64,000 nucleotides of DNA, taken from positions 1 to 64,000 of the IMG/VR virus record IMGVR_UViG_3300031884_000002, one strand, 5' to 3'. The notes under the pieces are model-generated. The model worked only from the letters and a program-made list of their open reading frames with translations. It did no database searches and was not told where the DNA came from. Made by a program: the position numbers and the translations under genes. Positions 1,121-56,025 of this stretch are shown in pieces. The stretch's first letter is position 1, and each line of letters starts with the position of its first letter.

Positions 1121-1208
1121 TGGTGCGGACAACGAGATTCGAACTCGTGATGGATCAATGATCTATGGATTAAAAGTCCATTGGTTTCGGCCACTTACCT
1201 ACATCCGC
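1121..1208 (-). tRNA. tRNA with UUU (Lys) anticodon on a long-variable-arm (Leu-like, type II) body
   Basis: GCGGATG/TGTCCGC acceptor, A73, CCA; anticodon arm ATGGA-CT TTT AA-TCCAT; variable arm GATC-ATT-GATC; T arm ACGAG-TTCGAAT-CTCGT. Confidence 0.85.
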
Positions 1209-1209
1209 A

Positions 1210-1364
1210 TTAAAATTATTACACTTAACACAACTTTCGCCTTGTCACCTGTCAGATTCGTCATCTGGGTCGATGATAGACCGATCTCCGTTTTTGTCAC
1301 ACTTGGGTTCCGCTTGGATAGAGTTCTGCTTTAACCCAACTCTAACTTACAAATTCTTTATTAC
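1210..1364 (-). ncRNA. Candidate structured RNA with H-type pseudoknot, upstream of the tRNA cluster
   Basis: Minus strand AGAGTT..AACTCT interleaved with GGGTT..AACCC, plus hairpins GGTC/GACC and CAGAT/ATCTG. Starts just after the promoter at 1371-1398. Confidence 0.35.
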
Positions 1365-4315: not shown

Positions 4316-5195
4316 TTAATACGACCACTGACTAGTAAAACTTATTCCAAATCCAAATAATTGAAATATTATTGATTCATATCCATATGCTCGTTGATAG
4401 GATATTCGGGTATTAAAATCTAATGTAGTTGTTGTATTTCCTTCACCATCTTCATATTTATATATAAATGTAGGAATCCAAATACCAACACAATAATAAT
4501 CAAAATCACTATTTTCCCATCCTATTGCAATATTATAAATAATCCATCTTAACCATTTATTTTTATAATAACTATTGGTATTTGTTTTTAATTTCTTACG
4601 AACCGACTCATAAATCGTCATAAATATTTTGTTTTTAATTGTTCCAATTTATCGGAAGCATCTTCAATAATTTCGGAAAATTTATCAGTTAATTCAAATG
4701 TAGTATCTTCTTTTGATTCTGCTCTTCCTATATCAAATGAAGTGTTACACATATCATCTATTTTCAAATTATTAACAAAATGATTAACTATTTTTTTGGT
4801 AAATAGTTTCCATTGTTCTCTTTCTGAGAATGATAGTGTATTTACATCTGGATAAAATTGATATAGTTCAGACCATAATGATTCAAATTGAGCCGGAACT
4901 TTATTTAAAATGTCGGCAATATCATCCATATATTTTATTTCATTTTTCATAATTACCCAGCATCATATAATCTATCACCATTATCATCGTGTTTAGGTTC
5001 TACCATATCATTCAATGAAATATCCCATTTGAACTTTGGTTTATAATCACCATCGCCATCACAATATAGAGATACGATACGAGAACCTCCCAATCCTCCT
5101 AATTGTTGCATATATTTTAACATAGCAAGAAAATGAGGTATCCATCTTTCGGACATTTCACATTCAATAGTAAACTTTTTATTTTGGTATTTCAT
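4316..5195 (-). CDS. Three small co-oriented hypothetical proteins (4316-4621, 4618-4950, 4953-5195)
   Basis: ORF track; abutting or overlapping start/stop codons. Confidence 0.7.
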
Positions 5196-6063
5196 TTGTA
5201 TCGGGATTATATTTTATTGCTTCATAAAATTTTTTAATTAAAACTATTATTTCTTCAGGTAAATACGAACATGCAGTTTCGACTAATTCTTTGGATATAG
5301 ATTCCGTTCCATAATATGCTTCGGCAATAGCTCCAGCAATTGCGGCATTAGTATCTGTATCACCTCCGATATATATAGCATTTCTAATTGCAGATTCGTA
5401 ATTATTAGATTCCATAAATGCAATTAATGCTTGTGGTGCAGTAACATTACATCGAATAGTTGTCTTTGGTTGTTTTCTGGCTTCGTCTAATGTAATATTG
5501 AGCATATGACCGTAATTCTCTTGAATATAATCTGCAATTTCCATTTTATCATATCCATTTTTTGCCATATGGATTGCAGTAACAATAGATTTTACCCCTC
5601 TGATAGATTCGGGAGAGTTATGCGTATATTTAATACTTTCTTCTGCATTTTCCAATGCAGTTTCTATATTAGAATCACTATAATACATTCCGATAGGACT
5701 ACACCGCATCATTGCTCCATTGGCATAACTATTATTAATTTGTAAAACTTTACTCGAATCTGCCAACCATTTTTTAAACCCGCTTCCATATCCTCTATCG
5801 GGATATTTAGTTCCCCATTTATAATAACTATCAGAATATTTGATTGGAGTAGGAACCCTAAATCCAAAAAAATGAACTGGATGATTTATTATTGCTTCTG
5901 CGGTGGCACAAGTCAATACTGTATCATCGGTAAATCTACATTGGGGAGTAAATAACCTAAAGTTTTTATTTTGAACTGGTCGTTTTGGATATTTGGGCGA
6001 CGATTCGTGCCTACTTCCTATTATGTCTCCGATTATTGCGCCGAGCATAGAACTCCTTCCCAC
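5179..6063 (-). CDS. ADP-ribosylglycohydrolase (DraG/ARH family)
   Basis: GAIIGDIIGS, TDDT, NGAMMR, GGDTDTNAAIAG motifs; true start probably at MLGAIIG. Confidence 0.92.
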   Translation of the reverse strand: MGRSSMLGAIIGDIIGSRHESSPKYPKRPVQNKNFRLFTPQCRFTDDTVLTCATAEAIINHPVHFFGFRVPTPIKYSDSYYKWGTKYPDRGYGSGFKKWLADSSKVLQINNSYANGAMMRCSPIGMYYSDSNIETALENAEESIKYTHNSPESIRGVKSIVTAIHMAKNGYDKMEIADYIQENYGHMLNITLDEARKQPKTTIRCNVTAPQALIAFMESNNYESAIRNAIYIGGDTDTNAAIAGAIAEAYYGTESISKELVETACSYLPEEIIVLIKKFYEAIKYNPDTNEIPK

Positions 6064-7200: not shown

Positions 7201-8525
7201 TGGAGGAAGGAAACCACGACGGCTTTAGCCTCGTGGAGGAATTCCGACCATTCTCAATATTAACACACCACCCATCAAATGTCAACCAAAAATATCTTCA
7301 CTGTATGAAAGATTTTTTGTGTTTTGGGATTCTCACGTGTATTTATATGTAGATGAGTAAATTAACATACAACACCAAGTTGATATTCACGGACGATAAT
7401 GATAAATCAAATATCATTAAAATGCTTGACTCCCAACTGTTTGTGTGGAATGAATGCTCAAAAATCCAATTTACTCTACCGAAAAACTCCATCATTGATT
7501 TACATTCTAAATTTTATAAGTCATTCCGAGAAAATAACCCAACCATTCCATCCCAAGTAGTAATTTCCGCAGAACAGTCCGTATTATCTACATTTAGGAC
7601 AATTAAATCAAATAAACAAAAAATAAAAAATCCACCAATTAAAAAGAATTTGTCAATTCGTCTTGATAAAAGAACATACTCCTATAAAAATGGAACATTT
7701 AGTTTGATTAGTTTGGGAAAACGAGTTAAATGTCAACCATACATATTCCCTAAATTACGAGAATTAATGTCTAAATATGCCTTTTGTGACCCATTGCTTT
7801 TTGTTCATAATAACGATATTTACATTGCTTTAACTTTTACCATTTCCGAAGTTAAATCTCAAAACAAATTAGCGATTGGAGTTGATTTGGGATGTGTGAA
7901 TTTAGCGGCAACAAGTGAAGGTAAATTGTATAAATGCGCATCATTTAATGCTAGAAAGAGACAATTACGACATCTCAAATCGGCATTAAAATCTAAAGGG
8001 ACGAAATCATCCCGAACCCATTTAAATAAATTACGACATAAAGAGCATAACGTAAACAAGAATATGTCTCATAATTTGGCAAATAGAATCATCCAAGACA
8101 CGACTGCCGATGTTATTGTCTTAGAGAATCTTAAATCATTAAAAGTTAAGAAGCATAAGTATCAGAATAAAAATAGAATTTCTCAAATTCCAATGTTTGA
8201 ATTGAGAAGAATAATTACCTATAAGGCACTCTTAAATGAGAAAACGGTTATCGTAGTAAATCCATCATACACAAGTCAAATTGACCATCGAACTGGAAAA
8301 CTCGACGGTCAAAGAATTGGTGGCAGGTATATCGGAAAAGATGGTCAAATATTACATGCGGATATTAATGCGGCTTGTAATATAGGACTTCGTTCCAAAC
8401 TCCCATGCTCAATAAATAATTATTATGCGTGGCAGGTGAAAGTCAACTCACCAATCGTATGTAAACCTTCTGCTAGTCGGGAAGTATTACAAGCACCTAT
8501 CCCTTTAGGGTAGGTGTTGTTTGAC
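7201..8525 (+). mobile_element. IS200/IS605-family tnpB-only element (IS1341-like); left boundary approximate (7200-7212)
   Basis: Left-end hairpin CCACGA-CGGCTTTAGCC-TCGTGG; right-end hairpin CACCTATCCC-TTTA-GGGTAGGTG followed by TTGTTTGAC; no tnpA. Confidence 0.8.
7353..8513 (+). CDS. tnpB: TnpB RNA-guided nuclease
   Basis: RuvC motifs GVDLG, VLENL, HADINAACNI; YTSQ motif without the usual CxxC zinc finger. Confidence 0.9.
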   Translation: MSKLTYNTKLIFTDDNDKSNIIKMLDSQLFVWNECSKIQFTLPKNSIIDLHSKFYKSFRENNPTIPSQVVISAEQSVLSTFRTIKSNKQKIKNPPIKKNLSIRLDKRTYSYKNGTFSLISLGKRVKCQPYIFPKLRELMSKYAFCDPLLFVHNNDIYIALTFTISEVKSQNKLAIGVDLGCVNLAATSEGKLYKCASFNARKRQLRHLKSALKSKGTKSSRTHLNKLRHKEHNVNKNMSHNLANRIIQDTTADVIVLENLKSLKVKKHKYQNKNRISQIPMFELRRIITYKALLNEKTVIVVNPSYTSQIDHRTGKLDGQRIGGRYIGKDGQILHADINAACNIGLRSKLPCSINNYYAWQVKVNSPIVCKPSASREVLQAPIPLG

Positions 8526-9689
8526 TGTAGTTAATACGTCTTTAACTACATCTTTATTATATGATGCTTCTTTTTTCTGTCTTGTTGGAATCTCTGGTAA
8601 TGGCTGGTCGAGCACTCCTTCCATTGGTTGACAATATTTAATCCATTTCGTAGGCACTGGACTAATAATGCCAATCATTCCACCAACAATAGCACAATTT
8701 GTATCAACATCACCAGAACATTGACAGACTTCAATGATTGCCTTTTCATACATTTCATCGATTGGATATTTTCTCAATGCTTTAATGGTTAAAAATACAC
8801 ATAGAGGAACGGTATCTTGGCAAGTAACATGAGTTCCATTTCCTAATACTTCAATTAGTTTTGCCAATGGAGTCCCAATGGATAATTTAGATGCTTTTTC
8901 AATTCCATTCCACACTTCTCCTTTGGGAACAAAGCTCAATAATGATTTATAATGGATTTCAGAATCTATTGTTAAATTTGGATTTACTTTCATCAGTTCA
9001 ACCATAGAAGCAATAAAGTTTGATAATAATGCTATTGCAATAGCCCCAGCAACTCCTTCAGGGTGACTGTGAGTTGGTTCGGCGGATAATGTGGCTTGTT
9101 TAATAACATCAGTTATTGGACTTCCATAGTAATAAGCACCCAATGGAGGAATACGCATAACCGAACCATTTCCACATGAACCTACTAATTGTTGGTCGAT
9201 TGGTTTATTACCCGATAAACTTTTCAAAGCCGCCAAACTTTCTTTTACTGATTTTCCAGCGGCAAGACCGGCAATAACATTATCGGTTGAAGACATTCCT
9301 TCACTTTTTTTAAATGTTAAATTGGCTTCTCTCCAAGGTTTTCCTTCATATATATCTTTTAATACCTTACGAGTCATCAACCCATATCCCATATATTCTC
9401 CCCCATCTTGATGATACATAAATCGTTTGGAGAACTCCATTGCCAAATCATCTTGTAATATTTCTTTATTTTTAAGAATATGATTAAATAATACAATTGC
9501 TTCATCCGTATCATCAGAATATTGAAAAGAGGCTCCTCGTGAATCGATATTATTTATTCCAAACTTAGATATTCCTTCATCGAATGCTTTTAGAATATCG
9601 GTTACATTATAAAGTTGCCCCATATTTCCAATACAGTCGCCAACCCATAATCCTATTAATGATTTTAATGCTAATTCTTCGTTATTCAT
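8505..9689 (-). CDS. ADP-ribosylglycohydrolase (second paralogue)
   Basis: GDCIG, YSDDT, GNGSVMR, HPEG, GDVDTNCAIVG; its last codons lie inside the IS right end. Confidence 0.9.
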   Translation of the reverse strand: MNNEELALKSLIGLWVGDCIGNMGQLYNVTDILKAFDEGISKFGINNIDSRGASFQYSDDTDEAIVLFNHILKNKEILQDDLAMEFSKRFMYHQDGGEYMGYGLMTRKVLKDIYEGKPWREANLTFKKSEGMSSTDNVIAGLAAGKSVKESLAALKSLSGNKPIDQQLVGSCGNGSVMRIPPLGAYYYGSPITDVIKQATLSAEPTHSHPEGVAGAIAIALLSNFIASMVELMKVNPNLTIDSEIHYKSLLSFVPKGEVWNGIEKASKLSIGTPLAKLIEVLGNGTHVTCQDTVPLCVFLTIKALRKYPIDEMYEKAIIEVCQCSGDVDTNCAIVGGMIGIISPVPTKWIKYCQPMEGVLDQPLPEIPTRQKKEASYNKDVVKDVLTTVKQHLP

Positions 9690-15247: not shown

Positions 15248-15637
15248 TGGTGGAGATGAAGGGAATTGAACCCTTGTGTTATGAACTAATCTTAAATAAT
15301 ACTATATGTTTAGTTTATTATGATTTTAACTGATATATCAACAAACAATTTACTTCAGTCGAGATGAATTAATTGATTCATCACCAAACAAATGATTGGA
15401 ACCATTTGCAGTTTTTTTCTGCTATTAGATGTAAGAGTTTTAGCAGAAATCCAACTCTTACATACTGTTCAGGCTATTGCTAACTCTTCACAGTCAACGG
15501 ACAAATCTACTTCATCCATTGCAGCCAATTGAGATAATCGATTAGCATTTAATTTTTGACTGATTTTTATCGTAGCCAACAATCATCTACGACATACATT
15601 ATTTAGTCAGAGAACATAGTCGATACCTGTCATCCCC
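15248..15637 (-). ncRNA. ssrA: tmRNA; tag ANRLSQLAAMDEVDLSVDCEELAIA*
   Basis: 5' GGGGATG / 3' CATCTCCACCA with G3-U70 wobble; T arm GGGTTCAATTCCC; resume context TTAAAT-GCT; upstream TTGACA-N17-TATATT. Confidence 0.93.
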
Positions 15638-16149: not shown

Positions 16150-17301
16150 TTGATGATAACTTATAATACACAAATTATACCAGAATGTAAAGAAGATTTT
16201 GATAACTTGAAATCTATACTTGAAATGGAACAATTGGTATTTAATTTTGCATCTAAACAACAATTTACAGAAAATAAAAAATCATTAGTAGTATTACATT
16301 CCAAAGTATATAGAAATATAAGAAAGAAGTATGCGAATATCCCATCCCAAGTGATTATCAAAGCCGAACAGGACTGTTTATCTAAATATAGAAGTATAAA
16401 ATCTAATCAACATAAAATAAAAAAACCAATAGAAAAAAGAAAATTATCACTTAGATTGGATAAACATTTATATTCTCATCCTTCAAAGGATGAAAAATAT
16501 TCAATCAGAATAACAACTATTAGTGGCAGAAAAATATTTAAGTTTATCATTTATCACAAACTGAAAGAATTACTCGATAAGTATAAATATCGTGATCCAT
16601 TAATTTATGAGAATAGCGGTAAATTATTCATATCATTCACATTTGAAAATAAACCGCAAGATAAATTAAAACAAAAATTAGCATTAGGAGTAGATTTAGG
16701 AATTAGACGTGCCGCTGGGACTTCGATTGGAAAACTTGTCATAGATAAAAAGTTTAATGGTGAAAAACGAAAACTTAGATTTAATAAACGAAAATTACAA
16801 TCGAAAGGAACTAAATCAGCAAGAAAACATTTATTTAAATTAAAACATAAAGAACATAATAAAAATAAAAATCAAACTCATTTAATAGCGAATGAGATAT
16901 TAAAAACAAATGCCGATACAATTGTATTGGAAAATCTAAAAGGAATAAAAAGAAAGAAAACAAAATATCAAAATAAGCGTTCAATCGGACAAGTTCCGAT
17001 ATATGAACTTCGTAGAATAATAACCTATAAGGCAGAGAACCAAGGTAAAACGGTTCTTTTAGTTTGCCCTTCTTATACTTCTCAACGAGACTCCGTAACG
17101 GGTAAAATTGAAGGTGAAAGAAGAGGTTGTAGATTTTATTCTAAGAATGGACTTATTTATGATGCAGATATAAATGCAGCAATAAACATTGCTAAATTAT
17201 CTAAACTTCCCATATCACAGACTAATAATTTGACTTATGGGCAGGCATCCATCAATGTGCCATATATATATAAATCTTCTACTAATGTAGAAGTAGTATA
17301 A
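16150..17301 (+). CDS. tnpB: Second TnpB nuclease, intact RuvC triad, no recognisable left end
   Basis: GVDLG, VLENL, YDADINAA; clear paralogue of 7353-8513; likely ATG at 16153. Confidence 0.9.
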   Translation: MMITYNTQIIPECKEDFDNLKSILEMEQLVFNFASKQQFTENKKSLVVLHSKVYRNIRKKYANIPSQVIIKAEQDCLSKYRSIKSNQHKIKKPIEKRKLSLRLDKHLYSHPSKDEKYSIRITTISGRKIFKFIIYHKLKELLDKYKYRDPLIYENSGKLFISFTFENKPQDKLKQKLALGVDLGIRRAAGTSIGKLVIDKKFNGEKRKLRFNKRKLQSKGTKSARKHLFKLKHKEHNKNKNQTHLIANEILKTNADTIVLENLKGIKRKKTKYQNKRSIGQVPIYELRRIITYKAENQGKTVLLVCPSYTSQRDSVTGKIEGERRGCRFYSKNGLIYDADINAAINIAKLSKLPISQTNNLTYGQASINVPYIYKSSTNVEVV

Positions 17302-28080: not shown

Positions 28081-28827
28081 ATGGCAAGCAAAATAATGAC
28101 AATAGATAAAAATGAATTACAACTAATAATAGACAACAGTAAAACTTACGGTGACGTATTACGTCATTTTGGGTTGGAAAATAAAGGAGGAAATCACAAT
28201 ACTCTAAAACGAAGGATAAAAAATGATAATTTATCAACTGATAATATTATTAAATTTAAATCAGGAGGAGGATGGAATAAAGGATTACATGGATTTGATA
28301 TTAAAGCATTATCTAAAGAAGAAGTATTAAATATAGTGTTTATTAAAAATTATACTGGTGGAATACGACCAAGAACATATATTAGGAGATATAATCTAAT
28401 AGAAGAAAAATGTAATGAATGTGGATTAACTAATATCTGGAATAATAAACTAATTACATTAGAATTAGATCATATAGATGGCGACTCACATAATAATTTA
28501 TTAACTAATTTACGATGGGTATGTCCTAACTGCCATAGTCAAACTGATACATTCAGAGGTCGAAATAGAAAAATAGAACATTTTTGTGAATGTGGAAAAT
28601 TAAGATGTAAATCATCCAATAAATGTGTAGATTGTAATCATAAAGAACAATTAAATAAAAATCATAAAATTATTTGGCCAAGTGATACTGAACTTATGGA
28701 AATGATGAAGACTACTTCATTATATAAATTAAGTAAAACTCTTGGTGTTACTTCCAATTCTATTAGAAAACATTGTTATAAACGTAATATAAATTGGAGG
28801 AAAGATGGTGCAATGGGAGGGATTTGA
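28081..28827 (+). CDS. HNH homing endonuclease; 3' end overlaps tRNA-Lys antisense
   Basis: CNECG...LELDHIDGDSHNNLLTNLRWVCPNCHSQT. Confidence 0.9.
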   Translation: MASKIMTIDKNELQLIIDNSKTYGDVLRHFGLENKGGNHNTLKRRIKNDNLSTDNIIKFKSGGGWNKGLHGFDIKALSKEEVLNIVFIKNYTGGIRPRTYIRRYNLIEEKCNECGLTNIWNNKLITLELDHIDGDSHNNLLTNLRWVCPNCHSQTDTFRGRNRKIEHFCECGKLRCKSSNKCVDCNHKEQLNKNHKIIWPSDTELMEMMKTTSLYKLSKTLGVTSNSIRKHCYKRNINWRKDGAMGGI

Positions 28828-28885
28828 ACCCGTCTATCGTCCGATTAAAAGTCGGATGCTTATTCCAGATTTAAGCTTCCATTGC
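28806..28885 (-). tRNA. trnK: tRNA-Lys(UUU), canonical short variable loop
   Basis: TCCGA-CT TTT AA-TCGGA; GCAATGG/CCATTGC acceptor; ACCA. Confidence 0.9.
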
Positions 28886-54918: not shown

Positions 54919-56025
54919 TTATTTTTTGAGGCATTGGAAAATGAGCCGCTTATAATTTTCCGGTGTAAGAGGTTTATTATCAAGTAGTTGGAAAAGCATA
55001 CCTGAACGATTATTATTCTCTCCACCATACGATGATATAATTGCTCGGGCAGCAATACCACGCTCTTCTTTTGTAAGAGGTCTATCCTTTTTAAAAGGTT
55101 CTATAAATCTTTTCATTCCGGCTTCAATTTGCTTAACTTGTCGCCAAGCATCACAAATATTAGAAATATTACCACGACAATATTCGGCTAACTCATAATC
55201 AAAGGTAGTTAGAATATAGTTATAAAATTCAATATATGACGGATAGTTTTGAGAAATCCATACATCGATAATTTTCTCAACCGAGGATAACTCGCTTTTC
55301 ATTTTATGTAAAAATAAATATTTTGCCGCTTTTATTTTTAATTGCTGTTGATGATTGACATATAAAACAATTCCTTCTTTATCGGACCATTTATCTACAT
55401 TTTCAAGGAGATTTTCTAATGTAGTAAACAAATATGTCGCCGGTCTTTTCATGCCCAAGTCGATTGCCAATTTATCAAGATCAAATTGAGACATTAAAGT
55501 ATAATTTTTATGATAAATTAAACCAGTCAATATAAAATCAATCTCATTATATTTTAATACTATTTGATTATTAGGACTCACATATTCTGTAATGACGGAA
55601 AAATCCCAAGTATCATCAGTTGATAATTCAAATAATTTAGGATACTTTTGTTTAATAACGTCCATTTCATTTCCAGTAGTTAAGGTATAAGCATCTATCG
55701 TTCCTCGGGAACGTATTATAAAATTTCCTTTATACCGGCTTATTATAATTGTCGAACCATCTATTTTTTCTACAATAACACTATTATTTAGATTTGACGG
55801 AATAGGCGAAAGGTCTGGTTTTTCTCCATAATTAAAAAACTTTTTGTAAGATAAACTAACAGGTTCTCCTAAATAATTCCAAACACTTGACCTGAAAATC
55901 AGATTATTAGAATTCCAAGTCGCTCCAATTTGTTTAGGAGTAACTAAATATAACAATTTCCCATTCCAAATATGTTCGTTTACATAAAACTGTTCTCTGT
56001 CAATTTTTTGAATGTCTATAATCAT
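54919..56025 (-). CDS. RNA ligase (T4 Rnl-like nucleotidyltransferase)
   Basis: EKIDGS (motif I), TEYVSPNNQIV, EGIVL, LKIK. Confidence 0.85.
   Translation of the reverse strand: MIIDIQKIDREQFYVNEHIWNGKLLYLVTPKQIGATWNSNNLIFRSSVWNYLGEPVSLSYKKFFNYGEKPDLSPIPSNLNNSVIVEKIDGSTIIISRYKGNFIIRSRGTIDAYTLTTGNEMDVIKQKYPKLFELSTDDTWDFSVITEYVSPNNQIVLKYNEIDFILTGLIYHKNYTLMSQFDLDKLAIDLGMKRPATYLFTTLENLLENVDKWSDKEGIVLYVNHQQQLKIKAAKYLFLHKMKSELSSVEKIIDVWISQNYPSYIEFYNYILTTFDYELAEYCRGNISNICDAWRQVKQIEAGMKRFIEPFKKDRPLTKEERGIAARAIISSYGGENNNRSGMLFQLLDNKPLTPENYKRLIFQCLKK

What the first reader, a model, noticed from the sequence alone, without database searches (positions are those of the whole stretch)
1121..1208. Leu-type (long variable arm) tRNA body carrying a Lys UUU anticodon, alongside a normal tRNA-Lys
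Seen: anticodon loop CT-TTT-AA with a paired variable arm, short D stem and A73. A canonical tRNA-Lys(UUU) is at 28806-28885. Known: bacterial type II bodies normally belong to Leu, Ser, Tyr and Sec; LeuRS relies on A73 and tertiary shape rather than the anticodon, whereas LysRS reads UUU. Inference: it is either a Leu-charged AAA reader (missense tRNA) or a Lys tRNA re-scaffolded to evade host tRNA-Lys nucleases such as PrrC.
Basis: partly seen in the sequence, partly recalled or inferred. Interest (0 to 1): 0.75.

Follow-up and report, generated by a model that had tools for sequence, protein, structure and literature searches.

The report
Long-armed lysine tRNA of a giant phage
A 354-kb lake phage carries an intact lysine (UUU) tRNA with the extra arm textbooks reserve for leucine, serine and tyrosine tRNAs; it belongs to a widespread, apparently undescribed phage family that most likely still inserts lysine.

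Summary
Window 1121-1208 (- strand) is an intact 88-nt tRNA: anticodon UUU, 3-bp D stem, paired 16-nt variable region, A73, encoded CCA. It is identical in independent lake metagenomes.

The "Leu-type" label is not supported. It has G15/C48 and C20a instead of the A15-U48 and A20a that E. coli LeuRS needs. Its body resembles phage tRNA-Tyr and tRNA-Ser bodies more than tRNA-Leu.

It is not a one-off. A structural scan of IMG/VR gave more than 60 distinct long-armed tRNA-Lys(UUU) genes in unrelated, often 200-600 kb, phage contigs. The extra helix shows compensatory changes. A model built without the window sequence scores it 79.7 bits, second of 145 tRNAs. Cultured jumbo phages (CcrBL9, XacN1) carry long-armed Lys(CUU). 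One Actinomycetota genome has a long-armed tRNA as its only tRNA-Lys(UUU).

AAA is the phage's commonest codon, and in the capsid protein it aligns with Lys codons of relatives.

Best reading: a lysine-charged AAA decoder on a class-II scaffold. The arm's role, possibly escape from tRNA-cutting host defences, is inferred and untested. A missense tRNA is unlikely.

The parts
1121..1208 (-). Complete tRNA gene, 88 nt including the encoded CCA (1121-1123) and discriminator A73 (1124). A class-II (long variable arm) tRNA with anticodon UUU.
   Evidence: ARAGORN. Rfam RF00005 at 60.6 bits. Family covariance model R1 at 79.7 bits, E 2.5e-21.
1170..1176 (-). Anticodon loop CUUUUAA. The anticodon UUU lies at 1172-1174. 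Flanking 5-bp stem AUGGA (1177-1181) / UCCAU (1165-1169).
   Evidence: Read directly from the sequence. In the family alignment this stem is 98% paired, with compensatory changes at 4 of 5 pairs.
1149..1164 (-). Variable region of 16 nt: spacer A (1164), stem GAUC (1160-1163) / GAUC (1153-1156), loop AUU (1157-1159), 3' tail CAUC (1149-1152).
   Evidence: ARAGORN bracket structure and minimum-free-energy fold. Across the family the helix covaries, with 12, 22 and 16 double changes at its three pairs. The CAUC tail occurs in 20 of 62 members.
1183..1199 (-). D arm of class-II type: 3-bp stem GGU (1197-1199) / ACC (1183-1185), 11-nt loop AAGUGGCCGAA with G15, G18G19 and C20a.
   Evidence: A near-identical D arm (gtaggtaagtggcttaaacca) occurs in the long Lys(UUU) tRNAs of L167 and L177.
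1273..1300 (-). Promoter-like site GTGACA-16-TATCAT, about 60 nt upstream of the tRNA 5' end. A second one (TTGACA-16-TAAGAT) lies at 1371-1398.
   Evidence: Consensus scan only. It is not evidence of function.
28806..28885 (-). Second tRNA-Lys(UUU) of the phage. It has a short variable loop but an irregular structure (80 nt).
   Evidence: ARAGORN. Rfam 47.5 bits. R1 48.5 bits.

Best explanation
This is a functional phage tRNA gene of a widespread, apparently undescribed family: tRNA-Lys(UUU) built on a class-II (long variable arm) scaffold.

Inferred mechanism. The host's lysyl-tRNA synthetase charges it with lysine, because that enzyme reads the anticodon UUU plus A73 and both are present. 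The tRNA then decodes AAA, the phage's commonest codon, as lysine. The extra arm and the matching 3-bp D stem change the shape of the tRNA core without touching the decoding end.

Why the arm is kept is inferred at lower confidence, about 0.35. It would make the phage's Lys tRNA a poor substrate for host defences that cut or disable tRNA-Lys by recognising its body as well as its anticodon arm, such as PARIS AriB-like nucleases.

Shown here: the gene is intact, reproducible and a member of the family; the arm is under structural selection; AAA means Lys in this phage. Inferred: lysine charging, expression, and the protective role of the arm.
For: (1) The cloverleaf is intact and is the best-scoring tRNA of the window. 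It is identical in independent metagenome runs.

(2) The family exists. Of the 80 loci read, 61 carry distinct Lys(ttt) tRNAs of 82-94 nt, many on 200-600 kb contigs.

(3) Structural selection. On 61 members without the window sequence, 90% of cells pair. The covariation score is 0.69 against 0.197 in shuffles (0 of 500 shuffles reach it). The variable-arm helix has double changes at all three pairs. 47 of 62 variable regions fold into a hairpin of 3 bp or more, with mean free energy -2.64 against -0.55 kcal/mol in shuffles.

(4) Membership. Model R1, built without the window, scores it 79.7 bits, second of 145 tRNA hits. That is above every Tyr (73.4 or less), Leu (57.9 or less), Ser (56.6 or less) and type-I Lys (63.5 or less).

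(5) Lys identity. U34 U35 U36 and A73 make up the full published LysRS identity set, and a UUU anticodon transplant confers Lys identity (PMC9976931). C2-G71 and A73 argue against SerRS. G15-C48 and C20a argue against LeuRS.

(6) AAA is used at 71.7 per 1000, the top codon. The 13 AAA codons of the major head protein align to Lys codons in 87% of 1010 aligned codons of 79 relatives (62% AAG). None align to Leu or Tyr.

(7) In related phages, long-armed tRNAs with other type-I anticodons keep the cognate discriminator or acceptor marks: Asn G73, Gln U1-A72/G73, Cys U73, Thr U73. The genome's own three Arg tRNAs share one acceptor stem whether long-armed or not.

(8) One Actinomycetota genome (G059) has a complete set of 46 tRNAs in which the only tRNA-Lys(UUU) is an 85-nt long-armed one, lying among ordinary chromosomal genes.

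(9) Context for the protective role. AriB cuts tRNA-Lys(UUU) at 40|41 and needs contacts distal to the anticodon loop, and A41->C inhibits cutting (PMC12409363). The window tRNA has C41. The same scaffold, found without fixing the anticodon, also carries Asn(GUU), Lys(CUU) and Thr(UGU). The phage encodes a T4 Rnl1-type RNA ligase and an ArdC-like anti-restriction protein.
Against: No charging or expression data exist; the runs found are DNA contigs only.

No orthologue with a conserved anticodon was found in this phage's own close relatives. The family evidence therefore comes from more distant phages, and scan 1 fixed the UUU loop by design.

The body is closest to tRNA-Tyr. It keeps A73, U35 and G1-C72, which are main TyrRS determinants, so some tyrosylation cannot be excluded.

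Class IIb synthetases approach tRNA from the variable-loop side (from memory: Ruff et al. 1991), so a long arm might hinder LysRS.

18 of 68 family members have U73, which fits no simple rule.

The protective role rests on analogy. The anticodon loop is fully canonical, the host and its defences are unknown, and long arms also occur on tRNAs that are not known nuclease targets (Gly, Cys, Trp, Met).

In the actinobacterial genome AAA is a rare codon, so reassignment there is not excluded.
Confidence: 0.65

Rival explanations
1. Same molecule and same lysine charging, but the long arm has no adaptive role. The family would have arisen by anticodon shifts of duplicated class-II tRNA-Tyr genes in phage tRNA arrays: GUA to GUU to UUU, single steps that keep U35. 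The anticodon-reading class IIb synthetases (AsnRS, LysRS) simply followed. The tRNA then serves only to supply the heavily used AAA codon.
For: The body is closest to Tyr in the covariance-model ranking: XbC2 Tyr 73.4 bits and XacN1 Tyr 64 bits. The same scaffold carries Asn(GUU) 11 times and Lys(UUU) 9 times in the anticodon-agnostic scan. AAA is the top codon. Long arms occur on many other isotypes with no known nuclease link.
Against: 23 of 64 loci carry a short type-I Lys(UUU) next to the long one, and this genome has two Lys(UUU) tRNAs. That suggests the long form adds something a type-I copy does not. The arm is maintained by compensatory change across very distant phages. Long forms are frequent on the reported PARIS targets Lys, Thr(UGU) and Asn.
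Confidence: 0.25
2. Missense tRNA. The class-II body is charged by TyrRS, LeuRS or SerRS regardless of the anticodon, so AAA is partly read as Tyr, Leu or Ser.
For: A73, U35, G1-C72 and a Tyr-like variable arm are TyrRS determinants (PMC9976931). nev-tRNAs show that class-II tRNAs with type-I anticodons can be leucylated (PMC4033280; PMC3333845). The phage has no tRNA-Tyr or tRNA-Leu of its own.
Against: AAA makes up 7.2% of all codons and corresponds to Lys in conserved capsid positions, so misreading would damage every phage protein. nev-tRNAs, by contrast, read rare codons and are weakly expressed. The E. coli Leu tertiary elements A15-U48 and A20a are absent. C2-G71 and A73 disfavour SerRS. 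G34 is missing for TyrRS (A36 also differs). The full LysRS identity set is present. 18 of 68 family members have U73, which fits none of the class-II synthetases. No phage-encoded synthetase of the Lys/Asp/Asn, Tyr/Trp or Leu/Ile/Val families was found.
Confidence: 0.07
3. Non-translational decoy or pseudogene. The RNA presents a Lys anticodon arm to soak up or inhibit an anticodon nuclease, or the gene is a decaying copy, and it is not used on the ribosome.
For: [quoted passage not shown] A second Lys(UUU) tRNA exists in the genome.
Against: All four standard helices, the T loop UUCGAAU, G18G19, U33, A37, A73 and the encoded CCA are intact. It is the best-scoring tRNA of the window. Family-wide covariation in the acceptor and T stems is what selection for a translating tRNA predicts. 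In G059 a family member is the only tRNA-Lys(UUU).
Confidence: 0.03

Closest known systems
[quoted passage not shown] 2012, PMC3333845; review PMC4033280)
   Same: Class-II cloverleaf with a long variable arm, combined with an anticodon that belongs to a type-I amino acid.
   Different: nev-tRNAs are eukaryotic. They carry Leu or Ser identity elements, are leucylated, read rare codons and are weakly expressed. Here the tRNA is viral, lacks the E. coli Leu tertiary elements, carries the full LysRS identity set and reads the commonest codon.
Bacterial class-II tRNA-Tyr
   Same: A73, G1-C72, U35, a 3-bp D stem with a purine13.A22 mismatch, an AGYGG D loop, and a variable arm with a 1-nt 5' spacer, short stem and 3-4-nt 3' tail. 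Phage Tyr tRNAs score next after the family in model R1, from 52.4 up to 73.4 bits.
   Different: The anticodon is UUU, not GUA. The 3' tail consensus is CAUC rather than UUC/UCC. It decodes AAA, which is Lys in this phage.
Phage tRNAs that escape tRNA-targeting defences: T5 tRNA-Lys(UUU) against PARIS AriB (PMC12409363; Burman et al. 2024, PMC11464382), and anticodon-loop variants (van den Berg et al. 2023, PMC10264068)
   Same: A phage-encoded tRNA-Lys(UUU) that duplicates a host tRNA known to be a prime nuclease target. C41, as in the protective T5 change A41->C.
   Different: In the known cases escape comes from point changes in the anticodon stem-loop of a type-I tRNA. Here the whole core is rebuilt as class II while the loop stays canonical. 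No nuclease test exists for this form.
allo-tRNAs (Mukai et al. 2017; recalled from memory, not read here)
   Same: Bacterial long-variable-arm tRNAs carrying diverse non-Ser/Leu anticodons.
   Different: allo-tRNAs have 8/4 or 9/3 acceptor/T-stem geometry and Ser identity. This tRNA has the standard 7/5 geometry, A73 and C2-G71.

Membership tests
tRNA (Rfam RF00005) | Cloverleaf that matches the covariance model above the gathering score | tested here: met
   60.6 bits against 29, full-length match 1-71.
Class II (type II) tRNA architecture | Variable region longer than 10 nt that forms a helix, with a 3-bp D stem | tested here: met
   A 16-nt variable region with a 4-bp GAUC/GAUC stem, and D stem GGU/ACC with an A13.A22 mismatch.
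Bacterial tRNA-Leu | A73 discriminator | tested here: met
   A at window 1124. This feature is shared with Lys and Tyr, so it does not discriminate.
Bacterial tRNA-Leu | A15-U48 trans-Levitt pair and A20a in the D loop (E. coli LeuRS determinants, PMC9976931), plus a Leu anticodon | tested here: not met
   G15, C48, C20a and anticodon UUU. Leu tRNAs of related phages all have A14 A15. The Leu profile scores 6.7 bits with the loop masked.
tRNA-Lys (class II LysRS identity) | U34, U35, U36 and A73 | tested here: met
   Loop CUUUUAA and A73. The rule is from PMC9976931.
tRNA-Lys (canonical form) | Type-I body: 4-5-nt variable loop and 4-bp D stem | tested here: not met
   16-nt variable region and 3-bp D stem. 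The type-I Lys profile scores 4.7 bits.
tRNA-Lys (function) | Aminoacylated with lysine | not testable with these tools
   Needs charging assays.
Bacterial tRNA-Tyr | A73, U35, G1-C72 and a long variable arm | tested here: met
   All are present.
Bacterial tRNA-Tyr | Anticodon GUA (G34, A36) | tested here: not met
   U34 and U36.
Bacterial tRNA-Ser | G73, G2-C71, and a long variable stem with about 1 unpaired nucleotide on its 3' side | tested here: not met
   A73, C2-G71 (a listed antideterminant against SerRS), a 4-bp stem and a 4-nt tail.
nev-tRNA | Nematode-specific, Leu/Ser identity, reads rare codons | tested here: not met
   Phage origin. AAA is the commonest codon.
allo-tRNA | 8/4 or 9/3 acceptor/T-stem geometry | tested here: not met
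   7-bp acceptor stem and 5-bp T stem. The definition is recalled from memory.
   All features are present. R1, built without the window sequence, gives 79.7 bits, rank 2 of 145.

The most novel reading that the evidence does not exclude
Rebuilding a type-I tRNA on a class-II scaffold is a general counter-defence strategy acting at the level of tRNA shape. Phages, and a few Actinomycetota, add a variable arm to tRNA-Lys(UUU), and likewise to Asn(GUU), Thr(UGU) and others. The arm sits next to the 40|41 cleavage site and changes the core, so nucleases or other effectors that recognise the body of the host tRNA no longer act on it. The anticodon-reading synthetases still charge it correctly. If true, this breaks the rule that bacterial class-II tRNAs are only Leu, Ser, Tyr and Sec, and it adds a new mode of phage escape from tRNA-directed immunity.
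Probability: 0.3. Interest if true: 0.85.

Novelty: new variant of a known kind. Interest (0 to 1): 0.7.

Why it matters
Textbooks restrict the long variable arm in bacteria and their viruses to tRNA-Leu, Ser, Tyr and Sec. This window led to more than 60 distinct long-armed tRNA-Lys(UUU) genes in phage contigs. It also led to long-armed Asn, Thr, Met, Arg, Ile and other tRNAs, and to one bacterial genome whose only tRNA-Lys(UUU) has this form.

Some are already annotated as plain "tRNA-Lys" in cultured jumbo phages (XacN1, CcrBL9). I found no paper that remarks on them.

If they are lysine-charged, they show that LysRS tolerates a class-II core. That would matter for tRNA identity rules and for tRNA engineering. 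If the arm protects against tRNA-cutting defences, it is a new layer of the phage-host arms race. This can be tested directly in Caulobacter and Xanthomonas systems.

Tried and rejected
Exact 25-nt T-arm/acceptor pattern in IMG/VR: no hit.

BLAST of the tRNA against 55 records of phages related through the major head protein: only short chance matches.

Pattern AATGGACTNNNAATCCATAGATC: three hits that are a degenerate type-I Lys-like element, not homologues.

blastn of the tRNA against cultured phages: no match.

Metagenome scan with the variable-arm 20-mer: one chance hit and the phage's own source contig, Ga0316219_1000009. This is not independent evidence.

TAG, TGA or TAA recoding: code 11 fits and reading TAG as sense gives no real gain. 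No other code was used.

Phage-encoded synthetases PF00152, PF00579 and PF00133: none found.

A third 'Lys(ttt)' of 91 nt at genome 347166-347256 appears only at a lowered ARAGORN threshold. Its structure is poor, so it was rejected.

Variable-arm geometry as a Leu/Tyr/Ser classifier: not decisive, because Leu tRNAs of this clade also have 1-3-nt tails.

Expression: only DNA runs held as contigs were found, so there is no RNA evidence either way.

300 further genomes of the class of G059: none has the long Lys pattern, so it is not a general actinobacterial trait.

BLAST hits in Salmonella and Rhizobium phages annotated tRNA-Ser are Ser(ACU) tRNAs, not Lys.

No structure or complex prediction was run, because the tool gives no verdict for RNA.

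Full report
**What is there.** The window is the first 64 kb of a 353,772-bp virus record that CheckV rates 100% complete, with about 30% G+C. It recurs in at least 16 lake-water metagenome runs and in a freshwater run from another study.

ARAGORN and Rfam both call a tRNA at 1121-1208 on the - strand. At 60.6 bits it is the best-scoring tRNA of the window.

Read from the sequence, it has:
- a 7-bp acceptor stem, GCGGAUG/UGUCCGC;
- a 3-bp D stem, GGU/ACC, closed by an A13.A22 mismatch, with an 11-nt D loop AAGUGGCCGAA;
- a 5-bp anticodon stem, AUGGA/UCCAU, with loop CUUUUAA;
- a 16-nt variable region made of one spacer nucleotide, a GAUC/GAUC stem, an AUU loop and a CAUC tail;
- a standard T arm, A73, and an encoded CCA.

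The unconstrained fold gives the acceptor, anticodon, variable and T helices; its D-region pairing differs from the cloverleaf D stem. Contigs of runs X1 and X16, and of X17 from a different study in 2023, cover the gene with no differences.

A promoter-like GTGACA-16-TATCAT lies about 60 nt upstream, but this is a consensus match only. The second tRNA-Lys(UUU) at 28806-28885 is real. It is irregular (80 nt, 47.5 bits) and is the less canonical of the two.

**The genome around it.** Whole-genome ARAGORN finds 25 tRNAs and a tmRNA. Rfam finds 27 tRNAs. Most lie in an array at 336-353 kb, which continues across the record's ends into the first 4 kb of the window.

This tRNA is not the only odd one. 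Arg(UCU) of 91 nt, Arg(ACG) of 86 nt and Cys(GCA) of 81 nt also have enlarged variable regions. The three array Arg tRNAs (UCU, UCG, ACG) share one acceptor stem, GCUGUCG/CGGCAGY, whether long-armed or not. The arm was therefore gained or lost inside a cognate family.

The standard code fits the genome, and reading TAG as sense gives no real gain. No synthetase of the Lys/Asp/Asn, Tyr/Trp or Leu/Ile/Val families is encoded, so charging depends on the host. The phage does encode:
- a T4 Rnl1-type RNA ligase at 54919-56025;
- a CCA-adding enzyme;
- an AAA_33 kinase-domain protein;
- an ArdC-like anti-restriction protein 1.5 kb from the tRNA.

**Not a Leu body.** The published identity rules (PMC9976931) give four sets.
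- E. coli LeuRS needs A73 plus the A15-U48 pair, G18G19 and A20a.
- TyrRS needs A73 and U35, with G1-C72 in bacteria.
- For SerRS, G73 is a determinant and C2-G71 an antideterminant.
- LysRS needs the three anticodon bases and A73, and a UUU transplant confers Lys identity.

This tRNA has G15, C48 and C20a, which is not Leu-like. It has C2-G71 and A73, which is not Ser-like. It has U34 and U36, so it lacks G34, the recognised first anticodon base for Tyr (A36 also differs). It has the complete Lys set. All Leu tRNAs of related phages have A14 A15.

With the anticodon loop masked, profile HMMs score the window tRNA as follows:

| Profile | Bits |
|---|---|
| Long-Lys family | 18.4 |
| Ser | 15.8 |
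| Leu | 6.7 |
| Type-I Lys | 4.7 |
| Tyr | no hit |

In the structure-aware model described below, phage Tyr tRNAs are the nearest canonical bodies. "Leu-type" is therefore not supported. The scaffold is generic class II, nearest to Tyr or Ser.

**Relatives of the phage.** No orthologue of this tRNA was found in IMG/VR by exact pattern. BLAST against 55 records related through the major head protein also found none.

Those relatives do carry many long-armed tRNAs with type-I anticodons: Arg(ACG), Asn(GUU), Gln(UUG), Met(CAU), Ile(UAU) and Thr(UGU). In each case where it can be judged, the discriminator or acceptor marks are those of the amino acid named by the anticodon. Asn has G73, Gln has U1-A72 and G73, Thr has U73, and Met has an initiator-like 1-72 mismatch; this genome's own long-armed Cys has U73. 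That is the opposite of what missense tRNAs built on a Leu or Ser body would show.

**A widespread family.** I scanned IMG/VR for a Lys anticodon loop placed 16-30 nt from a T loop, which is too far for a type-I tRNA.

In the 80 loci returned, ARAGORN distinct tRNA-Lys(ttt) of 82-94 nt. Many are on contigs of 200-600 kb. In 23 of 64 loci a short type-I Lys(UUU) lies nearby. Members share:
- a 3-4-bp D stem with an AGUGG..AA loop;
- one spacer nucleotide;
- a 3-5-bp variable helix, often closed by a GAAA loop;
- a 3-4-nt tail whose consensus is CAUC, present in 20 of 62 members and in the window tRNA.

The structure is under selection. On the alignment of 61 members without the window sequence, 90% of cells pair. 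The covariation score is 0.69, against 0.197 in shuffles, and 0 of 500 shuffles reach it. Sliding the partners drops pairing to 37-49%. The variable-arm helix has 12, 22 and 16 sequences with changes on both sides at its three pairs.

A covariance model built from these 61 sequences scores the window tRNA 79.7 bits, second of 145 tRNA hits in 175 kb of tRNA-rich phage DNA:

| tRNA | R1 bits |
|---|---|
| CcrBL9 long Lys(CUU) | 83.3 |
| Window tRNA | 79.7 |
| XacN1 long Lys(CUU) | 75.9 |
| Best Tyr | 73.4 |
| Best type-I Lys | 63.5 |
| Best Leu | 57.9 |
| Best Ser | 56.6 |

The window tRNA is a member of this family.

**Is the anticodon tied to the body?** Scan 1 fixed UUU, so I ran a scan that leaves the anticodon free, using the tail plus T arm, CCATCGTGGGTTCGAATCCCAC. 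It gave 31 contigs:
- long Asn(GUU), 11;
- long Lys(UUU), 9;
- long Lys(CUU), 1;
- long Thr(UGU), 1;
- long Met(CAU), 1;
- a doubtful 'Leu(taa)' whose loop reads UUUUUAA, 1;
- a short suppressor tRNA, 1;
- no tRNA call, 6.

The scaffold is therefore shared by a small set of anticodons. Tyr GUA, Asn GUU and Lys UUU are linked by single steps that keep U35. That fits an origin by anticodon shift from class-II tRNA-Tyr genes, followed by the anticodon-reading class IIb synthetases. This is inference.

**Cultured phages and cells.** Long-armed Lys(CUU) tRNAs are present, annotated simply as tRNA-Lys, in Caulobacter phage CcrBL9 and its relatives and in Xanthomonas phage XacN1. The XacN1 paper does not mention their shape.

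In GTDB genomes the pattern hit 20 contigs, all from metagenome-assembled genomes. Most are phage-like tRNA arrays. Four Actinomycetota genomes carry a solitary copy, and in the one examined (L253) it lies beside ordinary chromosomal genes (PPK2, DsbA). It is the only Lys(UUU)-type pattern match in those genomes.

A full census of one of them, G059, gives 46 tRNAs covering all 20 amino acids. The 85-nt long-armed tRNA is the only Lys(UUU), beside a type-I Lys(CUU). None of 300 other genomes of that class has the pattern.

Seven literature searches found no description of long-armed tRNA-Lys in phages or bacteria. The library does not hold most subscription journals.

**What amino acid?** AAA is the phage's commonest codon, at 71.7 per 1000 against 13.0 for AAG. 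The 13 AAA codons of its major head protein align with Lys codons in 87% of 1010 aligned codons from 79 relatives. Of these, 62% are AAG. Arg accounts for 5%, and none are Leu or Tyr.

A phage tRNA that put anything but Lys at AAA would damage every protein. Four further observations point the same way: the full LysRS identity set, the cognate discriminators on other long-armed tRNAs, the U73 subgroup of the family that fits no class-II synthetase, and the cell whose only AAA reader has this form. I conclude that it most likely carries lysine.

This is inference. Residual tyrosylation through A73, U35, G1-C72 and a Tyr-like arm cannot be excluded without assays.

**Why the arm?** This was not tested. 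tRNA-Lys(UUU) is the classic target of anticodon nucleases. [quoted passage not shown] It is inhibited by A41->C. It also needs contacts distal to the anticodon loop, because restoring the cleavage site in T5 tRNA-Lys does not restore cutting (PMC12409363).

The variable arm emerges right next to that strand. The window tRNA has C41. Long arms are frequent on Lys, Asn and Thr(UGU). This overlap is suggestive only. Long arms also occur on Gly, Cys, Trp, Met and Arg tRNAs, the sampling was seeded with Lys, and the host is unknown. A neutral origin by anticodon shift is a serious rival.

**Verdict.** "Leu-type" is wrong and a missense reading is unlikely. "Re-scaffolded Lys tRNA" is supported as to what the molecule is, and open as to why it has this form.

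The wider result is a large and apparently unremarked family of class-II-shaped tRNA-Lys, with sister Asn and Thr forms, in big phages and a few bacteria.

Noticed in passing
window 1124-1166 as seen in run X18: In run X18 the contigs match up to 1123 and again from 1166. At 1166 one contig continues with 15 unrelated letters (CCTATAAAATATCCG on the + strand). A strain in that sample may therefore carry a different 3' half of this tRNA (variable and T arms). It could also be an assembly break.
   Followed up: no
G000:C1:131456-131530 (+), outside the window: A tRNA with anticodon CUA (an amber suppressor, which ARAGORN labels 'Pyl'). Yet reading TAG as sense barely lengthens the open frames. 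Its role is unexplained.
   Followed up: partly
window 15248-15637 (-): A phage-encoded tmRNA (Rfam 82.9 bits) with tag peptide ANRLSQLAAMDEVDLSVDCEELAIA.
   Followed up: no
G000:C1:338456-338546, 342973-343058, 342139-342219 (-): Further long-armed tRNAs of the same phage: Arg(UCU) 91 nt, Arg(ACG) 86 nt and Cys(GCA) 81 nt. The Arg ones share their acceptor stem with a normal 76-nt Arg(UCG). A long Arg(ACG) with a different but still paired arm also occurs in relative L090:2833-2919.
   Followed up: partly
L225-L246 (IMG/VR loci), e.g. L234:243-330: A family of 87-88-nt long-armed tRNA-Asn(GUU). It has the same CCAUC tail and T arm as the Lys family, and some members (e.g. L234, L244) have U73 instead of the usual Asn G73.
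   Followed up: partly
L302 (G059:C15:37180-37263) compared with L305 (G059:C16): In the Actinomycetota genome, the long-armed tRNA-Lys(UUU) has D and T arms nearly identical to those of the genome's own tRNA-Ser(UGA). The D arms differ at 2 positions and the T arms are identical. The acceptor stem, discriminator and variable arm differ. It looks like a chimaera or a converted Ser body.
   Followed up: no
window 54919-56025 (-) and G000:C1:128104-128511 (+): A T4 Rnl1-type RNA ligase (Pfam RNA_lig_T4_1, phrog_562) and a separate AAA_33 kinase-domain protein. Together they could be a tRNA-repair pair like T4 Rnl1 and Pnkp.
   Followed up: partly
window 7353-8513 (+) and 16150-17301 (+): Two TnpB/Cas12f-like (OrfB_IS605) genes. 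Two ADP-ribosylglycohydrolase genes also lie nearby, at 5179-6063 and 8505-9689.
   Followed up: no
L314:285-375 (Salmonella phage 7t3) and L315:290-379 (Rhizobium phage RHph_TM30): Class-II tRNAs with the unusual anticodon ACU (A34), annotated tRNA-Ser. The Salmonella phage one has A73 rather than G73.
   Followed up: no
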